DNA of 64,000 bases from Orbicella franksi (GCA_964199315.1 OZ116704.1:2542001-2606000); one strand, 5' to 3'. Shown: positions 737 through 9,071, counted from the first letter of the stretch. Numbers and translations: made by a program. The notes: generated from the sequence alone by a model not told the origin.

Positions 737-2633
737 CACGAGTGTGTCTGTAACTGACATCACCATGGAAACTCTTGGTGTAGAGAAGAGATCTGTCGGT
801 CAATCAGATGCTGACGTGATCCTGATCATCCAACTGGTCGCCATCTTTACACAGCCAGGCCAAGGATCCTGAAGTCAGCTGCTTGGCGTGACGCGATACA
901 GGACTGTTGTGGACCACTTCATTTACATGTGTTAAACAGCTTTGTAGAACAAGGCAGAGCAGTGCAATGAGATGTAAACACGTGGTCCTGTATCCTGAAG
1001 CTTTGCTGTCCCGAGAGTGAAGACAAGCTTGCGGACATTCTCTTGATCTATCAATAATTGTCAGAATTAAGAAATGTATGGTAACCAGTAAGGACATGGA
1101 AAAACTCAAACTCGCCGTTAATTGTTGATCAACTCTCCCCCCCCCCCCTCCCCTCCCCCCCAAAAAACCCCTGTCAAGCCAGTCAGATTGCGCGTTTACT
1201 TGATAGTCGGTCTGGGTTGCGCTAGAATTTATTAGCAGTCAGTTTCAAACTACTTGAGAGGAACTCATTATTAGGGGCTCTCTGACGGGTGTTGTCCTAG
1301 GCGACTTCAAATCGTGCTGAAGCTCCATCTTTGTACACTTGACATAATATGACTGAAACCTTGAATAATTTCGAACGGTGCTGTACAGAAAAAATAAATC
1401 ATTCCCCCGGTACATAATATAACAAGAAGGATGAAACTCGGTTGCAGCAATAATTATTCAGGGGTAGAGAAATTATTTTTGAGGAAGAGAAACAAAGATG
1501 TTTTCCTCTATTTGAATTGAATAGAGTCGGAATTTTGTGTGTACAGAATTTGGAATGCAAGGCTATGAATAGTGGCGTAGATAGAGTGAAAGGCCGCTCC
1601 TTGTGCTAAGTATTTGTGTGCTTTTGTTGCCGTGCAATGTGTAGTTTATTTTTTTGGCTGTTGGACGAAGTCTGTCGACCTGAAAATCTTAAGGTGTTTA
1701 TCTCTTTTCAGGTGAACTCTCAAACTGAATCGATTAGAGGTAACAAGATTATTTCAAATTCCAGCTAAGGTTCTAGAAAGTATTAAATATAAGAAGTAAA
1801 TACAGTGGTCACAAACTACAATACTTAGAAAATACATTGACAGTAAATCTATTTAATAGTGAATTATGCAGGGACATCGTTCGCTTGAAATGTTTTTGAA
1901 CGATTTAAATGAACTGAGTGATCTGCTGAAGGCTATGAGAAATAAAAGTTTTACTGAAAACAGCAATGTTTGCCAGTAGTCATTTAGTTATGTTAAATTG
2001 TAGTACGTGCAACAGTAATATTTCATTTACCCCACATTTTACCACCAAACAGTATTTTTTTTTTTGTCCGCAACTTGAAATTGAACCATCTCGTTGGGCG
2101 CGACCCCAGCGAATGGCTGAAATTCAAGATAGACATCAATTTGTTGGTTTTTCCATCGCTTGGCTAATCAAAGTCAAGGAAGCAGAGCATAATCGGGAGC
2201 TGGTACAGTGCACGTGGAGAGCTTGATATTCTTTGATTTGATTAGCTGAGATGTTGGAAAACCAACAAAACGTCTATACACCAGCGGGAGGCCATTCGTG
2301 GATAGAGTTTTCAAGGAAGACTATGGGCGTATCTAGACCGATTTAGCTCAACCCATTTTGCAGGGATGAGCAATTATTTACAAAACATGCAATTAAGAAT
2401 CTAATACATTTACTTTCACATGTATCTGTTCTTAAAGCAGCAATGTCACGACATTTTAAGTCATTTTCTGATTACTTTAGATAATTTCCTAAGACAATGA
2501 CTTCAAATTGTAATTTAAAAAACAAAAATGAATAAGGATGGTCACGACCGAGAAAGATTTACACGGATTACAATTAACAAACTTTAAAAAAGTTTTAAGA
2601 TGCGCGTTCTATGGCGTAGCTCCTTTAATACAC

Positions 2634-5322
2634 TCAGCCGGAAACTACAGTCAGCTCCTTCGTTTGCAGTTCACTTGTTTTCACTCCTAGTTCGATGTTC
2701 CATACTCCCTTTTCAACATCAACAGCATTACCTGAAATATAAAGATGAAAACTGTTAATCGGGGCGTTACCAGTCCTGGCTATCTGATGTTACCTCGCCT
2801 GGGATTTACTCACTGTTATCACAAACAAAAGCTAATTTTAATGTGTTAGAATAATTAATAATATACATGAAAAAGTTACTCGATTCTGACTGGCTGAGAG
2901 CAGTGCAGTTCACGTGTAACACCAGTGCAAAAAGTGTAACATCAGTGCAAATTACACATAATTCTAGATTATGATTGGCAGAAAGACAATAGGAAATTTT
3001 CTAAGCCAATGATATCACGTAAAATGATGACAAAAATTTTGTGCAGAAACTTTGAAAAAGGTTTTCTCGAATGAGAAAAAGTGGCTTCAAGAAAGATCTT
3101 CTGGCACTTCTACGCGAATTTTTTCATGTTTATACTATTAATAAGTAATAGCAGAGGTTTTAATATGGTGCACGTGCGTACCGATGAAAAAGCTACCTGA
3201 TAAAAGATATCAGTTAATTGTCAATTGAGAATTTATCTTTTGTGAGGATAGCGTAGATACCCTTCGTCCAATTTCTTGTCCCTTACACCTTCAGTGATAA
3301 CACTAAGGCTATGTTCACGCTTGGTGACTAGCACGGTGCTCCAGTACGATTCCATCTTTGCACTAATGTGAACACACCTTTATTCCAGGTACACACACCA
3401 GAATTCGGACACCGTGCCCGTGCCCGTGAACTCGATCATGACCTTGTACTCGGGCACTTGATGGTACTTGAGTACTTGGAGTTCCCAGTGTCTGAACGCA
3501 ACACCATTTTGTGCCGGGTGCCCAAGCACCATTGCTCGGACATCAAGTGTGAACACAGCCTACGTAATTTATAGGGAAATGTTTTAATTTAATTTAGAAT
3601 AGGGAAAGAATAAACGATAGGGTAAGTCATGTGGCGTTTTGTCTGTTGTGCATGGGGCCAAATAAGACAGCAAAAGATGAAACAACTGAGATTTTGTCAT
3701 AGGTTAAACTACAGAATGAAATAGACGGAATTACTCAAGCAACTTAAAGGTATGGCCACCTGTTAATGTTCTGATGCATATTTTGTTCCAAACGGACGTT
3801 TTTGTTGGATCGTGCAGGAATTTTAAGACCCTAAACGACTTTCATCTGTGCTGAACATATCATGACTGAAGAGACTCAGACATGACAGAGAACAAGTAAA
3901 AGGTTCGGCTTAAGTGATGGGTAACAAAAACTGAAGTCATTTTAATTATTTATGAGTGTAAAAGTCCAGTTTCGAGTTTGCCATGACCGCTGATTAAAAG
4001 CACTGAGAACGCATTTGCACAGGGTTAGCCTCGACCTAAAGTAAAATGTTCACAAATTCCAGCGAGAAGATGGCCTGTTTACAGCTCTGTGTATTGTTTA
4101 ATTTTCAAATTTGTGGCACCTTCCCGCCAGTATTTGTGAATATTTTTTTTTAGGTCGAGGCTAACCCTGTGCACATGCGTTTTCAGTGCTTTTATTGAGC
4201 GGTCATGGCGAACTCGAAACTGGGCTATTCTATTTCATCTGAAGGCTGAGATCTAAGATACAAACCAGCGGTGATTTCCATGTGTCTGACTCTGATGCTA
4301 ACATTCCACAGTGCTCCTATCGTCAACAAGATGATGATCAGAGCGCCACAGGCCAGCAGAACATGATCGATGAGTCCCAACCGGCGAGTAGATGAAGCCC
4401 GCTTCACATCTTGACGGTATTTCCCTCTGCTATGGTCTTTTAGGCAGCGGAACTAAAAAAAACACAAACAAGAAATCTAAATCATTTTGATTAATTGGTA
4501 GGCAATACCTACAGAGCAACCGCAATTTCATGTTCAGAACATCTCCGATATCAACGAAGAATTAAAGCCAAATTCAAAGGGGCTAATGTCCCAGCACTCC
4601 ACACCCTCCACTCCCTTGGTTTCAGCATTGCCCCAGCACTCCACACCCTCCACTCCCTTGGTTTCAGAAGTACCCTAGCGCTCCACACCCTCCACTCCCT
4701 TGGTTTCAGCAGTGCCCCAGCATTCCACGCCCTCCACTCCCTTGGTATTTGTTTACTCTATGTGCGGAGTTGTACTAAATAGCAAATGCACTGTGACATC
4801 TAGGAGTGTACATTCGTGTGGACCGACTAGCTTCAAAGACAGAAAATAGATATCTAACTAGTTATAATAAGCCATTTCAGGGTTACATTACGCTTCTGAT
4901 TTAAAACCACATGAAAGTGAACGTGCAAGTGAAACACATTTTCATATGACTGGTTTTGCACGAAGATTCGTTTTGACGCAGAAGCAAAAGGCAACTCGCA
5001 AATGGCCTATTGGACACCTCTAAAATTGGACAAACACGGGATTGCGCGCCAATATTACGTGACAAGTACACGCGCGGAGAACCAGTCGATAGGGAATGTT
5101 TGTAATAGATACGATTAAGTATCTAGGTTACTGATCTAAGCCGGTTATTATTATTTAAATGTTCTATTTTGACAATCCAAGCCTTTTGTTACTTTTCGAT
5201 GATGACTATGGATCGGAGAAACGTTGGGTGACAGCAAATAAGACAAAAATTCGCTAGGGAAAAGCAATGAAGTCAGTAAAATTAAACAATGCTTTCTTAC
5301 ATCCTGTTTCCAGAATAGATTG

Positions 5323-5355
<33 letters not shown>

Positions 5356-8300
5356 CGATCGTTATCATCATCGTCACCATCCATTTCCAAACATTCGGTA
5401 AAATTTTGATCGAAGTAGCTTCTGTTCAAGAATTGAACTCTTACTCCTATTGTAGGTTTCTGCCACATAAAGTCATCATCGAGAACGCTGACGATCGTGA
5501 AATCTGGACTTATTTCTTTATGATTAGCCTGGCAGCCAAACATCCAGACTTTATCTACAGTACCATTCTGCAAGCTTGTGAGGAGTTCACGCTCAGTTGA
5601 ATATTCTGCAATTAACAAACGTAGCAAAAACATAAGCTACGGTCATTCCAATAATCACGCTGCCGTCTTAGACATTTTAGACCGAGTAATTGCCCACATT
5701 TTTCCGTTTTTGCAAGTGATCACATTACGTTGGCGTTGACACCCCACGGAAGAGAGAATGCTATTTCTACTGTGGTTGATGAGCCACAACTAGCCTGCGA
5801 CCAAGCTCACCTTTGAGTCACGCGCGCGAGCGGCGAAGAGCAAAGCGATCCGGCGGGAAGAAGTCTGGTGAAGAGGCACCACTTACTCGTCTCTCGCGGC
5901 TTCGCCGCTCGATTTCGCGCTCGCGGCTACGCAGCGCGCGATTGTGCTCCAACATGAGCCTGCTCACCCTTCGTGGCTATCACGCTCTGAAATTAAGCTT
6001 CCAGTGTAACCAAATTCAAATCTCAGTTTAAGATTATATTTAGACTGGTTTCATTCCGAAATAGAGAATAATGTGAATTACGCGAGGAACTGCTATATTG
6101 TACACAGTTAGCTGAGTGAAAACACTCAATAACTGGATTAATACCTATCACTGATTCCGCTCCGTAGCAGTATTTCTGAAAGAAACTCTTGCTTCCTAAA
6201 GGTACACCAATCTGCAATAAATACACGGTATAGAGTGATTTTCAATCGAGTGTCGTAAAACCAAACCAAAGTAGTATATCTAGCCGATCACAAAGGACGC
6301 ATGTACAGACAATACAGTTATTTATTTAACTTCGCCTAACTAAAATACAGTACAACAAAATTCAGTAGCTAAAGCTACTCATATATAAACAAGAAGAGTC
6401 AAAAGGAAACAAAACAGAAGTTCAAATCGCTAGAAACAGCACGACGGCGGGCACAGAAGAGACCTCGCTGTGTTGAACCTGGGACAGATTGTTCTCCAGG
6501 TTCCTATGCTGTCAACGTCGTACAGATCTAGAGCCCTGTTGTAATTAAAGTGGTAAACGTTTAAATGAGGCTAGGGAGATGTGACTCGTGCGTACAGTGA
6601 ACCAATGAACCGTTTTTTAAGCCAATTGTGAAACTTAGTGATGCAAACCTAATTACTCTTCGACCCCCAAATGAAAACCGTTCTATACAAGCCGGGTATT
6701 TTGGGACAAATTAAATATCCGGCCGAGCCTGTGTACATCTGTGACATTTTTTCTGGCCCACAACAACAGTTCCAATGCTGTTGTTTATAGTGGTCAATGC
6801 GCTTAACTACACCTGGCTACTTCACAGGCATGGTCAAATTCAGTTGCAACGAGAATGGTTTTATCGAATCATAGCGCCATTTTTCTTTTCATATTATATT
6901 ATACTGCACATTAGTGCCGGATTTTACCTGCCAAGGGACAAGCGCAGCAAAGAAGACCGCATTCCTGGATTATCAGCTGCTCTTCCTTTGAGCAGTCAGG
7001 GAATGAGATAACATAGATGAAATACTGAATAGTTCATTTATTTAATGCAGAAAAGGTAGGGATTTACCGCTCTCCCGAACTAAGGGCACATAAAACGTTT
7101 GACAAATTGAAACTAATGTGCAATAAATAAAATGGATAAATTATAATAATAATGAAAAAGCTGATTACACATGCCAGTATCTGAAAAATCAGGATAACAA
7201 AGAGAACTTTGATGCACTTGGTTGTTAGCTAGTTTAGAATTCTAGCTTGTCTTTGTACATTAATCAAATGTTCCATGAAATACATATCTTATACCTTGTT
7301 TCCAAATATCTCGTTTAAAGGACTCAGTCCATCAGCCGTAATGGACGAGGAGATCTGGGCAGTAAAGGTTGACATTAACAGCATTCCTATTATCATCCAC
7401 AGTGAAGCGTAGGCTCGCGCCAGGAACGACCGCGGCGTCTTGTCACCATACCTACCAAACAAATATGCTAATTTGATTTACAATAAAAACTGTTGACATT
7501 TTGCACTCTTCATTCAAGTCAGCAAGTAAATTTTTCAGCTGTTGATGTTCCCGGGCAGAACACAAAGTTAGAATTTTCTTGGCTCGAATAATAAACTCTG
7601 GGATACACAAAGGAGAGCAATTACCGAGGCAGGGGAGTAGAACATAATGTTACTTATTATTCTTGCAGATATTGACAGGTTCTATATATACTTGAAAATT
7701 GATTTTCTTACCCCACTGTTGTCATGGTAACAATGGCCCACCACAAACCTTCCCGTATGCCGCTCCAAAATGAGTTTGGAAAGTGTCCAGAATTTGCTTT
7801 GTGATCCTGTTGAAAAAAAAAAGCGTAGATTATTTTCCTTTCACGGTGTAAACAAACCAACCTAATAAACTCAATATAGTTTTAAGTCTTAAAAAAATTG
7901 GAATTTTTCTTGGAGAAAAATGGAGAACAAAATGCTTATAAATGTAACAGATGGTATTAAAATAAAAATTTTTATTATTAATATATTTTCTATTATTCTT
8001 GTAAGAACTTAGTTTTTTTCTATCCATGTTATTTCTTTTCCACACATGTTTCCCCTTGTTTTGAATTTCGTCAGCAACTTTCAGTGGATAAATAAAACCA
8101 CACGAGTTCTTTTGACATAAGAATTGCGAATGACGCATATCTACCGTGGCTGAAGAACAGCTTTACATTAAATTCTAGGTCTTCATTTTAACTGTTCACT
8201 GCTTGGGGAAATATCTGACTGAAACAAGTGCTAGTAAAATTTGCAGTGTCTGAAACTAAAGACAGAGTTACTACGCTACTGGTTTTATTTCCATGCCTTG

Positions 8301-8854
8301 AAAGTGGTCCATTTAGCCGCGTCTTTCCTATCCACAAACCTTTATGCATCTTATTGTCTATAACGTTATACCTACGCTTATTAGTTTACTTAAAGACTGA
8401 TCCGTTATATGCCATATATAATTCTGAAAATACTCACAAAAAACCAGATCAGAATTCCTGATAACATGGCAGCCATTAGGCAGAGAATGAACAGTTGCCA
8501 TATCTTCTCAAACGCGCGCAGAATCTGACTTGCAGTGTTGGTAGAGGCTTCTTTTGTAGCCAAGACAGGTCTATGCAGCTTGTTCAACGTTATATTTGGA
8601 TCTCTAGAGATCAACGGAAATTTCACCGAAAGAGCTGGACAACTTTTTGTCCCAACTGCTGAATGATGTTGAAGGCAATTATTTGTTAAATTACGAACGT
8701 AGCCTTTCAATGAGTGGTTTTCCTTGGAGAAAAAACCGAATTCAAACCTACGATTCCAATGAAACTTCACACAAGAGTCATTTCGTTTATCCAAAGGATG
8801 AGCAACTTCAACATTTAAAATGATGAAGAAGAGGCAAAAGGCCCTGCACCGCAT
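2634..8854 (-). CDS. GluR0/iGluR-like membrane protein with K+ channel pore (signal peptide-S1-M1-P loop TVGYG-M2-S2-poly-Asp-TM), 7 exons, 441 aa
   Basis: Exons 8854-8438, 7806-7712, 7451-7295, 6211-6145, 5605-5301, 4452-4266, 2731-2634; all GT-AG, phases consistent, 1326 nt ending in TGA. Signal peptide MRCRAFCLFFIILNVEVA; M1 IWQLFILCLMAAMLSGILIWFF; pore LWWAIVTMTTVGYGDK; M2 ending STFTAQISSSIT; SBP-family-3-like GNKIGVPLGS...EYSTERELLTSLQNGTVDKV; last TM HVLLACGALIIILLTIGALW. Confidence 0.85.
2856..3149. repeat. Unclassified interspersed repeat, truncated copy; inverted copy at 34545-34863
   Basis: Reverse complement of 34545-34863 over ~290 bp (e.g. GAGAGCAGTGCAGTTCACGTGTAACACCAGTGCAAAAAGTGTAAC vs GTTACACTTTTTGCACTGGTGTTACACTTGAACTGCACTGCTCTC). 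Confidence 0.85.
3307..3560. mobile_element. MITE, probably PIF/Harbinger type
   Basis: TIRs GGCTATGTTCACGCTTGGTG / CATCAAGTGTGAACACAGCC; flanks TAA and TAC (degenerate TWA-like target); no ORF of substance. Confidence 0.7.
3961..4229. mobile_element. Foldback MITE with ~80-bp terminal inverted repeats
   Basis: CCAGTTTCGAGTTTGCCATGACCGCT...GGGTTAGCCTCGACCTAAA pairs with TTTAGGTCGAGGCTAACCC...AGCGGTCATGGCGAACTCGAAACTGG. Confidence 0.85.
4590..4746. repeat. 42-bp minisatellite, ~3.7 copies, intronic
   Basis: Unit CCCAGCACTCCACACCCTCCACTCCCTTGGTTTCAGCATTGC starting at 4590, 4632, 4674, 4716. Confidence 0.95.
4866..5011. mobile_element. Short MITE with AAT-AG..CT-ATT ends
   Basis: Ends AATAAGCCATTTCAGGGTT / AACTCGCAAATGGCCTATT; related to 39142-39310. 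Confidence 0.65.
5791..5967. mobile_element. GC-rich MITE-like repeat of the TAGCCTGC family
   Basis: Starts TAGCCTGCGACCAAGCTC, ends GAGCCTGCTCAC; internal inverted pair CGAGCGGCGAAG / CTTCGCCGCTCG; same termini at 17430 and 43133. Confidence 0.6.
6231..6685. mobile_element. TA-flanked MITE interrupted by a LINE fragment
   Basis: TIRs TAGAGTGATTTTCA / TGAAAACCGTTCTA flanked by TA; split at a TACAGT duplication (6313-6318, 6593-6598). Confidence 0.7.
6319..6592 (-). mobile_element. CR1/L2-group LINE 3' fragment with 6-bp TSD
   Basis: Minus strand encodes frameshifted SLASFKRL / YNRALDLYDVDSIGTWRTICPRFNTARSLLCPPSCCF*, then a 3' UTR and AAATAAATAA tail; TACAGT direct repeats on both sides. 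Confidence 0.75.
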
Positions 8855-9071
8855 TTCTCTGATCTGTCGAAGTTTCCGCCTTCTGACGTGTATTGAGCGA
8901 ACTGTTAGGAGCACGTACATGCGACAATTTTAATTCTAGTAATAGCATTACAACCAATAAGCCGCGCTCAAATCCCCGTCACTTGGCATTTATTTAACAT
9001 CTAACCACCAGATGTTTAGACACCAACCAATCTTATTGTGCAGAATGGAGACAAGACGTCTATGTGAACTC

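What the first reader, a model, noticed from the sequence alone, without database searches (positions are those of the whole stretch)
2634..8854. Animal gene for a GluR0-like receptor-channel: K+ selectivity filter, SBP-like clamshell, iGluR-type gate and M4, no ATD
Seen: the spliced protein has a signal peptide, ~95 aa, M1, a Kv-like pore WWAIVTMTTVGYGDK, a second helix ending TFTAQISSSIT, a lobe GNKIGVPLGS..GAESVIEYSTERELLTSLQNGTVDKV, and a final TM helix. Established: TFTAQISSSIT aligns with the iGluR gate SYTANLAAFLT. The lobe follows the bacterial amino-acid-binding SBP family 3 pattern (gk.igv..gt...a.iv.y....l.aL.nG.vD). Cyanobacterial GluR0 has S1-M1-P(GYG)-M2-S2 without M4; animal iGluRs have ATD and M4 but no GYG; rotifer AvGluR1 combines a GYG-type filter with M4. 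Inference: this is an inverted-pore, extracellular-ligand-gated K+ channel, structurally intermediate between prokaryotic GluR0 and animal iGluRs, and possibly an inhibitory chemoreceptor class in anthozoans. Homologues probably exist as 'uncharacterized' coral proteins, so the novelty is in function and evolution.
Basis: partly seen in the sequence, partly recalled or inferred. Interest (0 to 1): 0.85.

Follow-up and report, generated by a model that had tools for sequence, protein, structure and literature searches.

The report
Coral potassium-pore glutamate-receptor-like channel gene
This is a real, expressed coral gene for an ion channel that joins a potassium-channel pore to part of a glutamate-receptor-type sensor; its cnidarian family appears unstudied, and this copy has lost much of the usual ligand-binding half.

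Summary
A seven-exon minus-strand gene (CDS 8854 to 2634, all GT-AG introns) encodes 441 aa. An independent 2,235-nt metatranscriptome contig aligns in seven blocks that end at the predicted junctions. RefSeq XP_020601485.1 (Orbicella faveolata, "uncharacterized protein") falls in the same 90% cluster.

The domain order is: signal-like segment, about 95 aa N-terminal ectodomain, M1, pore helix with TTVGYGD, M3 ending TFTAQISSSIT, S2 lobe, poly-Asp linker, M4, short tail. Pfam gives Ion_trans_2 and Lig_chan above cut-off. The AlphaFold model matches iGluRs collinearly from late S1 through M4.

S2 is homologous to bacterial GluR0-type S2 (HMM-HMM E 6e-7). The N-terminal domain of this scleractinian subfamily is too short for a full S1 and undetectable by sequence. 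The canonical ligand Arg and acidic residue are not kept here (Asn-Ile-Thr and Gly).

The family spans Anthozoa, Hydrozoa and Scyphozoa. Other branches keep a complete S1. The nearest outside relatives found are bacterial GluR0-like channels. K+ selectivity is likely; ligand gating is untested.

Earlier notes of this scan flagged the same family elsewhere in this genome. No paper describing it was found.

The parts
8855..8893 (-). 5' UTR as far as the transcript contig reaches. An alternative in-frame ATG lies upstream at 8920-8918.
   Evidence: L001 block 1 aligns to 8893-8437. The RefSeq-type model P0317 starts 22 residues upstream.
8438..8854 (-). Exon 1 (residues 1-139). It holds the signal-like hydrophobic segment (8798-8854), the N-terminal ectodomain taken as a reduced S1 remnant with three family-conserved Cys and the FP[LV]IS and RPxLATKE motifs, and M1 (about 8438-8506).
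   Evidence: AlphaFold: strand 29-33, helix 46-65, strands 75-83, 88-92 and 96-101, then helix 107-140.
7712..7806 (-). Exon 2. It holds the M1-P linker, the pore helix (GLWWAIVTM) and the first half of the filter (TTVG, 7712-7722). The intron splits the Gly171 codon.
   Evidence: Alignment to the Shaker pore.
7295..7451 (-). Exon 3. It holds YGD (7442-7450), M3 with the hinge Gly, the gate TFTAQISSSIT (7337-7369) and the M3-S2 linker.
   Evidence: This exon alone hits Lig_chan (E 1.6e-5) and Ion_trans_2 (E 3.2e-5)..
6145..6211 (-). Exon 4. It holds the first strand and helix of S2 (IGVPLGSKSFF...).
   Evidence: HMM-HMM alignment to bacterial S2.
5301..5605 (-). Exon 5. It holds the rest of the S2 lobe (EYSTERELL..GTVDKVWMFGC..), two invariant Cys and the poly-Asp tract (5322-5381).
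4266..4452 (-). Exon 6. It holds the third invariant S2 Cys, the conserved basic pre-M4 motif (C..HSRGKYR) and M4 (about 4294-4362).
   Evidence: The model helix 372-410 aligns to iGluR M4.
2634..2731 (-). Exon 7. It holds the cytoplasmic tail with the conserved VD[VI]EKG motif and the stop codon.
   Evidence: The same C-terminus is present in Oculina P0017.
1758..2633 (-). 3' UTR as covered by the transcript contig.
   Evidence: L001 block 7 aligns to 2732-1758.

Best explanation
The locus is an intact, transcribed coral gene. It is Orbicella-type and corresponds to RefSeq LOC110040577.

It encodes one subunit of a presumably tetrameric channel of the GluR0/iGluR superfamily. The domain order is: signal-like segment, small Cys-rich glycosylated N-terminal ectodomain, M1, re-entrant pore loop with an intact K+-channel filter (TTVGYGD behind a WW pore helix), M3 with a GluR0-type bundle-crossing gate, S2 lobe of the periplasmic-binding-protein fold, acidic (poly-Asp) linker, M4, 45-aa cytoplasmic tail.

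The topology is inferred to be inverted relative to KcsA, as in GluR0 and iGluRs. The filter would face the cytoplasm and the gate and lobes would face outside.

The gene belongs to a scleractinian subfamily (clade A) of a pan-cnidarian family. Other branches of that family keep a complete S1-M1-P-M3-S2 collinear with bacterial GluR0-like channels, plus M4.

In clade A the S1 half is cut down by roughly 35-50 residues. In this gene the canonical alpha-carboxylate Arg position is an N-glycosylation sequon and the alpha-amino acidic position is Gly.

Most likely mechanism (inferred, not shown): a K+-selective pore (about 0.7) whose M3 gate is pulled by the short M3-S2 linker when the remodelled ectodomain changes conformation. 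The trigger is not a classical alpha-amino acid. Real extracellular ligand gating is about 0.35. A constitutive or otherwise regulated K+ conductance is about as likely.
For: Gene model and transcript.

Pfam: Ion_trans_2 49.9 bits and Lig_chan 38.7 bits against a cut-off of 30.8.

Pore: identical to Shaker over MTTVGYGD. VIA-align gives Z 12-13 at 2.1-2.8 A to K+-channel pores.

Whole model: pLDDT 79.6. The best Foldseek hits are AMPA and NMDA receptors and plant GLRs, probability 1.00, collinear from query residue about 77 to 426-438, which includes M4. TM-score is 0.44-0.54 to bacterial GluR0-like models over query 37-350.

HMM-HMM comparison: clade A against bacterial GluR0-like gives E 6e-42 over residues 113-320. 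S2 alone gives E 6e-7, probability 92%. The S2-only model hits only type-II binding-protein lobes.

Family: the filter is conserved in 19 of 20 members and M4 is present in all. All 27 eukaryotic sequences lie on one side of a branch, SH-aLRT 98. The long-S1 branch aligns to the bacterial profile over residues 26-326, E 8.5e-46.

Constraint: dN/dS against the closest homologue is 0.19 in the TM core.

Outside-facing N-terminus: NxS/T sequons run at 3.0 per 100 aa there against 0.9 elsewhere, Cys residues are conserved, and post-M4 K/R exceeds pre-M4 in most members. The inverted topology of GluR0 was shown experimentally (PMC13099474).
Against: There is no functional data of any kind.

No SBP_bac_3 or Lig_chan-Glu_bd hit was found in any cnidarian member tested. 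The N-terminal domain shows no sequence similarity to S1, so calling it an S1 remnant rests on position, a structure-prediction overlap of TM about 0.5 and a motif spacing recalled from memory.

In this particular protein K/R is higher before M4 than after it (4 against 2).

N-terminal dN/dS is about 1.6 and S2 about 0.56, from one pair and few sites. This could mean relaxed constraint rather than a working sensor.

A K+ signature sequence alone does not prove selectivity.

Tetramer assembly and M4 packing were not modelled.
Confidence: 0.72

Rival explanations
1. The protein is a fully competent amino-acid (glutamate-type) gated K+ channel working like GluR0, with a complete two-lobed clamshell.
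For: S2 keeps the GVPxGS turn that corresponds to the helix-F Ser/Thr site, and the in-register SBP pattern. Most clade A relatives keep an acidic residue (LFDC) and several keep Arg seven residues after the FP motif. The long-S1 relatives look complete.
Against: This gene has Gly at the acidic position and Asn-Ile-Thr at the candidate Arg position. About 35-50 residues of S1 are missing. There is no SBP_bac_3 hit and no S1 profile similarity.
Confidence: 0.1
2. The protein is a background or otherwise regulated K+ channel in which the ectodomain is a structural, assembly or trafficking module and not a ligand sensor. It could be a leak channel, or one modulated by Ca2+ or pH through the acidic linker, or by partner proteins.
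For: The pore is strongly constrained while the ectodomain evolves fast. The canonical ligand residues are lost. An acidic S2-M4 linker recurs across clade A with different sequences. Sister architectures replace S1 with Ig or FN3 arrays.
Against: The S2 fold, three invariant S2 Cys, the short M3-S2 linker and the N-terminal motifs are conserved across many coral species. That argues for a working extracellular module coupled to the gate.
Confidence: 0.3
3. The gene is decaying or encodes a non-conducting subunit, that is, a pseudogenising paralogue or an auxiliary subunit.
For: Overall dN/dS is 0.62 and the ligand residues are lost. Transcript variants carry Cys-to-Arg at an invariant Cys, and the poly-Asp length varies.
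Against: The 441-codon frame is intact across seven exons. Transcripts are spliced. TM-core dN/dS is 0.19. The filter and hinge Gly are intact.
Confidence: 0.05
4. The protein is an ordinary 2-TM or Kv-type K+ channel that happens to carry an unrelated C-terminal domain, or the sequence is bacterial contamination or a very recent transfer.
For: Single-sequence search of solved structures ranks Kv pores first, E about 5e-9. The closest non-animal sequences are bacterial.
Against: The Kv match is confined to residues 111-199. There is only one TM helix before the pore and no sensor or RCK domain. The Lig_chan hit, the S2 homology and the collinear iGluR fold match all argue otherwise. Six spliceosomal introns, coral transcripts and orthologues in at least nine cnidarian genera exclude contamination.
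Confidence: 0.02

Closest known systems
GluR0 (Synechocystis slr1257) and the many bacterial GluR0-like channels (SBP_bac_3 + Lig_chan + Ion_trans_2, about 350-380 aa)
   Same: The pore consensus is the same (WWAxVTMTTVGYGDKTPK). The gate consensus is the same (FTAxIxSSLT). The M3-S2 linker and S2 lobe are shared and there is no ATD. HMM-HMM E is 6e-42. These are the best non-cnidarian hits in three searches. The inverted topology of GluR0 has been shown (PMC13099474).
   Different: The coral protein has a C-terminal M4 and cytoplasmic tail, a eukaryotic signal segment, N-glycan sequons, conserved Cys and introns. Its S1 is truncated with no SBP_bac_3 hit. The ligand Arg and acidic residue are not kept in this gene.
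[quoted passage not shown] 2011, as cited in PMC12332018 and PMC12226733)
   Same: It is an animal iGluR-superfamily channel with the TxVGYG signature and an M4. The cited papers describe it as resembling bacterial iGluRs and as a putative link between prokaryotic and modern receptors.
   Different: PMC12332018 describes AvGluR1 as having the architecture of eukaryotic iGluRs, and it is amino-acid gated with a solved, complete LBD. The coral protein lacks an ATD, has a reduced S1 and has no known ligand.
Animal iGluRs (AMPA, kainate, NMDA, delta, epsilon) and plant GLRs
   Same: These are the best structural matches of the whole model (Foldseek E 1e-8 to 1e-10, probability 1.00). The matches are collinear through late S1, M1, P, M3, S2 and M4. 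The Lig_chan profile is above cut-off.
   Different: The coral protein has no ATD and has a K+ filter in place of the Q/R/N pore loop. Its gate is TFTAQISSS rather than SYTANLAAF. Its S1 is half-size. None of these receptors appeared among 141 hits at E <= 1e-8 even when lengths up to 970 aa were allowed.
Protostome Ionotropic Receptors (IRs; PMC2924276)
   Same: They are ATD-less iGluR derivatives with divergent ligand-binding residues that serve as chemoreceptors. This is an analogy for what a remodelled LBD can become.
   Different: IRs derive from the AKDF iGluR lineage, have non-selective cation pores and have full-length S1. No specific sequence relation was seen here. An arthropod IR cluster appeared only as a low-ranking feature-based neighbour.
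Kv/KcsA-type K+ channel pore module
   Same: The pore helix and filter are the same, with Z 12-13 and 2.1-2.8 A rmsd over about 105 residues. Ion_trans_2 scores 49.9 bits.
   Different: The membrane orientation is inferred to be opposite. There is no voltage sensor. Extracellular lobes flank the pore and a third TM helix follows.

Membership tests
iGluR superfamily (Pfam Lig_chan, PF00060) | Lig_chan profile match above the curated cut-off | tested here: met
   P0027 (98.6% identical to the window product) scores 38.7 bits against a cut-off of 30.8. In paralogue P0028 the match runs to profile position 131 of 146, that is, into M4.
iGluR superfamily | Collinear S1-M1-P-M3-S2-M4 with a two-lobed binding-protein-fold LBD | tested here: inconclusive
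   M1-P-M3-S2-M4 is collinear with iGluR structures, and S2 is homologous to SBP lobe 2. The S1 half is about 80 aa, with no sequence signal and only a TM of about 0.5 overlap with bacterial models.
iGluR superfamily | SYTANLAAF gate motif in M3 | tested here: not met
   The sequence is TFTAQISSSIT. It matches the bacterial GluR0-like consensus FTAxIxSSLT.
Eukaryotic iGluRs proper (AKDF, NMDA, epsilon, lambda, GLR) | Amino-terminal domain (ANF_receptor type) before S1 | tested here: not met
   Only about 97 residues lie between the signal segment and M1, and there is no ANF_receptor hit.
Amino-acid-binding LBD (GluR0, iGluR, SBP family 3) | S1 Arg binding the alpha-carboxylate and S2 Asp/Glu binding the alpha-amino group | tested here: not met
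   In the window protein the acidic position is Gly (MFGC against the family LFDC). The candidate Arg position (FP + 7) is Asn in an NIT sequon, while some relatives have Arg. The S1 register is uncertain.
GluR0-type prokaryotic channels | SBP_bac_3 domain split by a 2-TM K+ pore, with no third TM helix | tested here: not met
   There is no SBP_bac_3 hit at E <= 1. A strongly hydrophobic M4 (mean hydropathy 2.66) follows S2.
K+ channels (Ion_trans_2, PF07885) | Profile match and TxxTxGYGD filter with an aromatic pore helix | tested here: met
   The score is 49.9 bits against a cut-off of 22.5. WWAIVTMTTVGYGD is present. The filter columns M167, T168, T169, G171, Y172 and D174 are invariant in 80 sequences, with V170 and G173 at 90% or more.
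K+ channels | K+ over Na+ selectivity | not testable with these tools
   This needs electrophysiology.
Voltage-gated K+ channels (Kv) | S1-S4 voltage sensor before the pore | tested here: not met
   A single TM helix precedes the pore, and the Kv matches cover only residues 111-199.

The most novel reading that the evidence does not exclude
Cnidarians possess a whole, unstudied class of extracellularly gated K+ channels, which would act as fast inhibitory or chemosensory ionotropic receptors. These would descend from a GluR0-like ancestor that gained M4. In reef corals one branch, including this gene, has rebuilt the sensor: a half-size, glycan- or Arg-variable S1 remnant plus an acidic S2-M4 linker. 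That branch would respond to something other than an amino acid, for example Ca2+ or carbonate chemistry, or a microbial or prey cue.
Probability: 0.25. Interest if true: 0.85.

Novelty: new variant of a known kind. Interest (0 to 1): 0.62.

Why it matters
In the papers read here, GluR0 and the single rotifer receptor AvGluR1 are treated as the links between K+ channels, bacterial binding proteins and animal glutamate receptors.

This work points to a large family in Anthozoa, Hydrozoa and Scyphozoa that combines a canonical K+ filter, a GluR0-type gate, an SBP-type lobe and an iGluR-like M4. That gives a second and much richer animal data set for two questions: how M4 was acquired, and how the pore lost K+ selectivity.

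If the channels are ligand-gated and K+-selective, they would be a direct ionotropic inhibitory receptor type not known from bilaterian nervous systems.

This gene is also a natural experiment. It shows how far the S1 half and the ligand-contact residues can be removed while the pore stays under strong purifying selection.

Tried and rejected
1. Pfam scans of the single exons gave only weak pore and gate hits on exon 3 and low-complexity noise on exon 5. A full-length reference was needed, and it was reached through an exon-1 search of the representative library.

2. Sequence search of solved structures found no hit for the N-terminal domain. For S2 it found only non-significant SBP hits, E 0.05-0.09, in the right register. 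The profile of alignment A4 hit SBPs strongly, but bacterial rows dominate it, so it says nothing about the coral protein.

3. HMM-HMM comparison of the clade A or clade B N-terminal domains with bacterial S1, or with the long-S1 cnidarian branch, found nothing. The MAFFT pairing of FPLIS with the bacterial DFSxP motif is therefore not reliable. An alternative register (FP strand plus Arg at +7) rests on my memory of the GluA2 P478...R485 spacing and is only a lead.

4. A rooted tree with animal iGluRs, plant GLRs and AvGluR1 could not be built. So 'intermediate between GluR0 and iGluRs' and 'ancient versus transferred from bacteria' remain open.

5. The Kv/SK/BK, contamination and pseudogene readings were rejected, as set out under the rivals.

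6. Literature: seven full-text searches and reads of six papers found no description of a cnidarian K+-filter iGluR-like family. None of the locus or protein identifiers appears in any held paper. PMC4096996 is not held.

7. The S2-only AlphaFold model was confident only for its first 60 residues or so, and its best Z was 6.6. That is supportive but not decisive alone.

8. Model coordinates are not exposed, so lobe-1 packing of the N-terminal strands could not be inspected.
Full report
**Observation.** The minus strand between 8854 and 2634 carries seven open segments. They join through canonical GT...AG introns with consistent phases into a 1,326-nt CDS of 441 aa. The exons are 8438-8854, 7712-7806, 7295-7451, 6145-6211, 5301-5605, 4266-4452 and 2634-2731. 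The intron after exon 2 splits the filter (TTVG | YGD).

A search of the 1.8-billion representative library with exon 1 gave 25 hits. Most were exon-1-sized ORF fragments. One was a partial spliced Oculina patagonica protein (P0017) whose C-terminus already confirmed use of exon 7. Searching with P0017 returned P0027 (439 aa, JGI), which is 98.6% identical to my model over its whole length. Its contig (L001, 2,235 nt, sample 3300008040) has no introns. It aligns to the window in seven blocks at 98-100% identity, and the block ends coincide with the predicted junctions. So the spliced mRNA exists, with UTRs reaching 8893 and 1758.

The same 90% cluster holds RefSeq XP_020601485.1, 'uncharacterized protein LOC110040577 [Orbicella faveolata]'. 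That model starts at an upstream in-frame ATG (8920). The ATG is absent from the closest homologue, whose reading frame upstream has no Met. Either start leaves the hydrophobic segment at the N-terminus and does not change the topology argument.

**What the protein is.** On P0027, Pfam gives Ion_trans_2 (49.9 bits, cut-off 22.5) and Lig_chan (38.7 bits, cut-off 30.8). It gives no SBP_bac_3, Lig_chan-Glu_bd or ANF_receptor hit. The pore helix and filter are identical to Shaker over MTTVGYGD.

An AlphaFold2 model built on an 80-sequence alignment has mean pLDDT 79.6 and pTM 0.67. Its elements in order are: strand 29-33, helix 46-65, three strands at 75-101, M1 helix 107-140, pore helix 152-167, M3 helix 180-213, an alternating strand/helix S2 region at 223-352, and M4 helix 372-410.

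- Foldseek against the PDB ranks NMDA and AMPA receptors first (E about 1e-8, probability 1.00, 340-420 aligned columns).
- Against Swiss-Prot models it ranks plant GLRs and animal iGluRs first. These are aligned from query residue about 77-82 to 426-438, for example to GluA2 509-868. That range covers late S1 through M4.
- TM-scores are low (about 0.3) because the lobes and the TMD are oriented differently in the monomer model.
- VIA-align shows that the TMD alone superposes on K+-channel pores at Z 12-13 and 2.1-2.8 A.
- The ESM-Atlas shape search gives TM 0.44-0.54 to bacterial SBP_bac_3 + Lig_chan + Ion_trans_2 proteins over query 37-350.

**The two halves of the sensor.** S2 is supported independently of the pore.
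- A clade A profile of residues 214-335 aligns to S2 of a bacterial GluR0-like profile with E 5.9e-7 and probability 92%, in register.
- The only hits among solved structures, though not significant, are amino-acid-binding proteins in the same register.
- An S2-only model hits only type-II binding-protein lobes. With Foldseek the probability is 0.99-1.00 at about 2 A over roughly 50 residues. With VIA-align, Z is up to 6.6 over model residues 3-96 against SBP lobe 2.
- Three Cys are invariant in S2 across two coral subfamilies.

The N-terminal half is a different matter.
- It has no hit among solved structures.
- It shows no profile similarity to bacterial S1 or to the long S1 of other cnidarian branches.
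- The full-length HMM-HMM alignment of clade A with the bacterial profile (E 6e-42) starts only at residue 113.
- By contrast, the branch holding the Nematostella, Clytia and Rhopilema proteins aligns with the bacterial profile from residue 26 to 326. That covers all of S1, at E 8.5e-46.

So the family as a whole has the complete GluR0 layout plus M4, and the window's subfamily has lost roughly 35-50 residues of S1. What remains is well conserved among about 26 coral sequences. It comprises three Cys, FP[LV]IS and RPxLATKE.

Ligand contacts are not kept in this gene.
- The S2 acidic position reads LFDC in most relatives but MFGC here.
- Seven residues after the FP motif, relatives carry either Arg or a glycosylation sequon. 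The window has N-I-T.
- The mapping of that position onto the iGluR ligand Arg rests on spacing recalled from memory, so it is a lead and not a result.

**Topology.** This is inferred, from several observations.
- The N-terminal segment is hydrophobic.
- NxS/T sequons are three times denser in the N-terminal domains of 20 family members (3.0 per 100 aa) than in S2 or the tail.
- Cys residues are conserved in both ectodomain halves.
- In most members there are more K/R after M4 than before it. This gene is an exception, with 2 against 4.
- GluR0 itself has been shown experimentally to be inverted relative to canonical K+ channels (PMC13099474).

**Family and relatives.** Named members come from Oculina, Stylophora, Pocillopora, Porites, Orbicella, Desmophyllum, Montipora, Nematostella, Clytia and Rhopilema. 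There are also many unnamed transcript contigs. The ESM Atlas holds several cnidarian clusters of 76-154 members.

In all three word-indexed searches the next-best hits after cnidarians are bacterial GluR0-like proteins. With the family profile their E-values are about 1e-37. No animal iGluR or plant GLR appeared among 141 hits at E <= 1e-8, even with lengths up to 970 aa allowed. The word filter may contribute to that result.

A maximum-likelihood tree of M1 through S2 puts all 27 eukaryotic sequences on one side of a branch (SH-aLRT 98). The window's protein sits in a scleractinian clade A (99), sister (93) to a second scleractinian clade B (100). The tree is unrooted in effect, so the direction of descent is open.

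AlphaFold DB cluster hits show the same channel module behind Ig, FN3 or 'sidekick-like' ectodomains in other proteins, and EF-hand-bearing relatives as well. Earlier notes of this scan (s1-240377, s1-207769) had flagged the same family elsewhere in this genome. They are AI notes. My results agree with them but were obtained independently.

**Constraint.** Against the closest homologue with DNA (L002), Nei-Gojobori dN/dS is 0.19 for the TM core, 0.56 for S2, about 1.6 for the N-terminal domain (4.5 synonymous against 25.5 non-synonymous changes) and 0.62 overall. This is one pair with small counts, and the linker is partly unalignable. The pore is clearly under purifying selection. The ectodomain is either diversifying or relaxed.

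**Mechanism.**
- Shown: the gene, the transcript, the domain order, the pore and gate motifs, S2 homology, and family distribution.
- Inferred: tetramer, inverted topology and K+ selectivity (about 0.7, from the intact TTVGYGD, the WW pore helix, the hinge Gly and conservation in 19 of 20 members).
- Also inferred: coupling of the ectodomain to the M3 gate through the 13-residue M3-S2 linker.
- Open: whether there is an extracellular agonist at all. A classical amino-acid ligand is unlikely for this gene.
- The acidic S2-M4 linker could concentrate cations or bind Ca2+ next to the outer gate. Here it is 17 Asp in 20 residues, encoded by a (GAT)n repeat that is two codons longer than in the transcripts. 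Other clade A members have an acidic linker of different sequence. That role is speculation.

**Novelty.** The gene is annotated only as 'uncharacterized'. Papers on iGluR evolution that I could read either do not mention K+-filter animal receptors at all (PMC6307864) or mention only AvGluR1 (PMC12226733, PMC12332018, 10.1101/2021.01.27.428399). I rate this a new variant of a known kind: the iGluR/GluR0 superfamily, in an ATD-less, M4-bearing, K+-filter form with a reduced S1.

Noticed in passing
window 25098-26162 (-): A single-exon 354-aa ORF is a rhodopsin-family GPCR (7tm_1, E 1.1e-34, full-length profile match).
   Followed up: partly
window 3960-4229: A 113-nt inverted repeat (arms 3960-4072 and 4117-4229, 87% complementary, 44-nt loop), looking like a MITE or fold-back element, lies in intron 6. 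One arm overlaps the stop (near 4225) of the frame that would be read if intron 6 were retained.
   Followed up: no
window 4590-4746: A 42-bp tandem repeat, 3.7 copies at 90% match, lies in intron 5.
   Followed up: no
window 5322-5381 and proteins P0317, P0320, P0324-P0326, P0328: The poly-Asp tract is a trinucleotide repeat. The window allele has two more Asp than all transcript or RefSeq versions. Some transcript variants also carry Cys-to-Arg at a Cys that is invariant across both coral subfamilies (TECLE to TERLE), plus N/D, S/P, S/G and W/R differences. All four coding differences between the window and L001 are non-synonymous.
   Followed up: partly
window 8918-8920 (-): An in-frame upstream ATG, used by the RefSeq model, adds 22 basic residues before the hydrophobic segment. 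Its context is weaker (C at -3) than that of the conserved ATG at 8854 (G at -3). A Logan transcript-like contig (P0327) includes it.
   Followed up: partly
protein P0031 (Stylophora pistillata LOC111331402): This is the only family member seen with an altered filter (TTVGYSD). Its Lig_chan score also falls below the cut-off.
   Followed up: no
AlphaFold DB clusters A0A6P8IQF3, A0A3M6TLF6, A0A3M6UNU5, A0A7I8VUK0, L1JY27: The same pore + S2 + M4 module appears behind sidekick-like, Ig or FN3 ectodomains. It also appears in a protein named DgyrCDS8581 and in EF-hand-bearing proteins. Organism names were masked in the output.
   Followed up: no
ENA contig of P0148 (ERZ26222911, 28 kb): A long-S1 family member is encoded as a single 1,485-nt exon in a eukaryote-like contig with reverse-transcriptase and integrase ORFs nearby. 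Its organism is unknown.
   Followed up: no
window 2140-2269: A 33-nt inverted repeat (79% complementary, 64 nt apart) lies inside the 3' UTR of the channel transcript.
   Followed up: no
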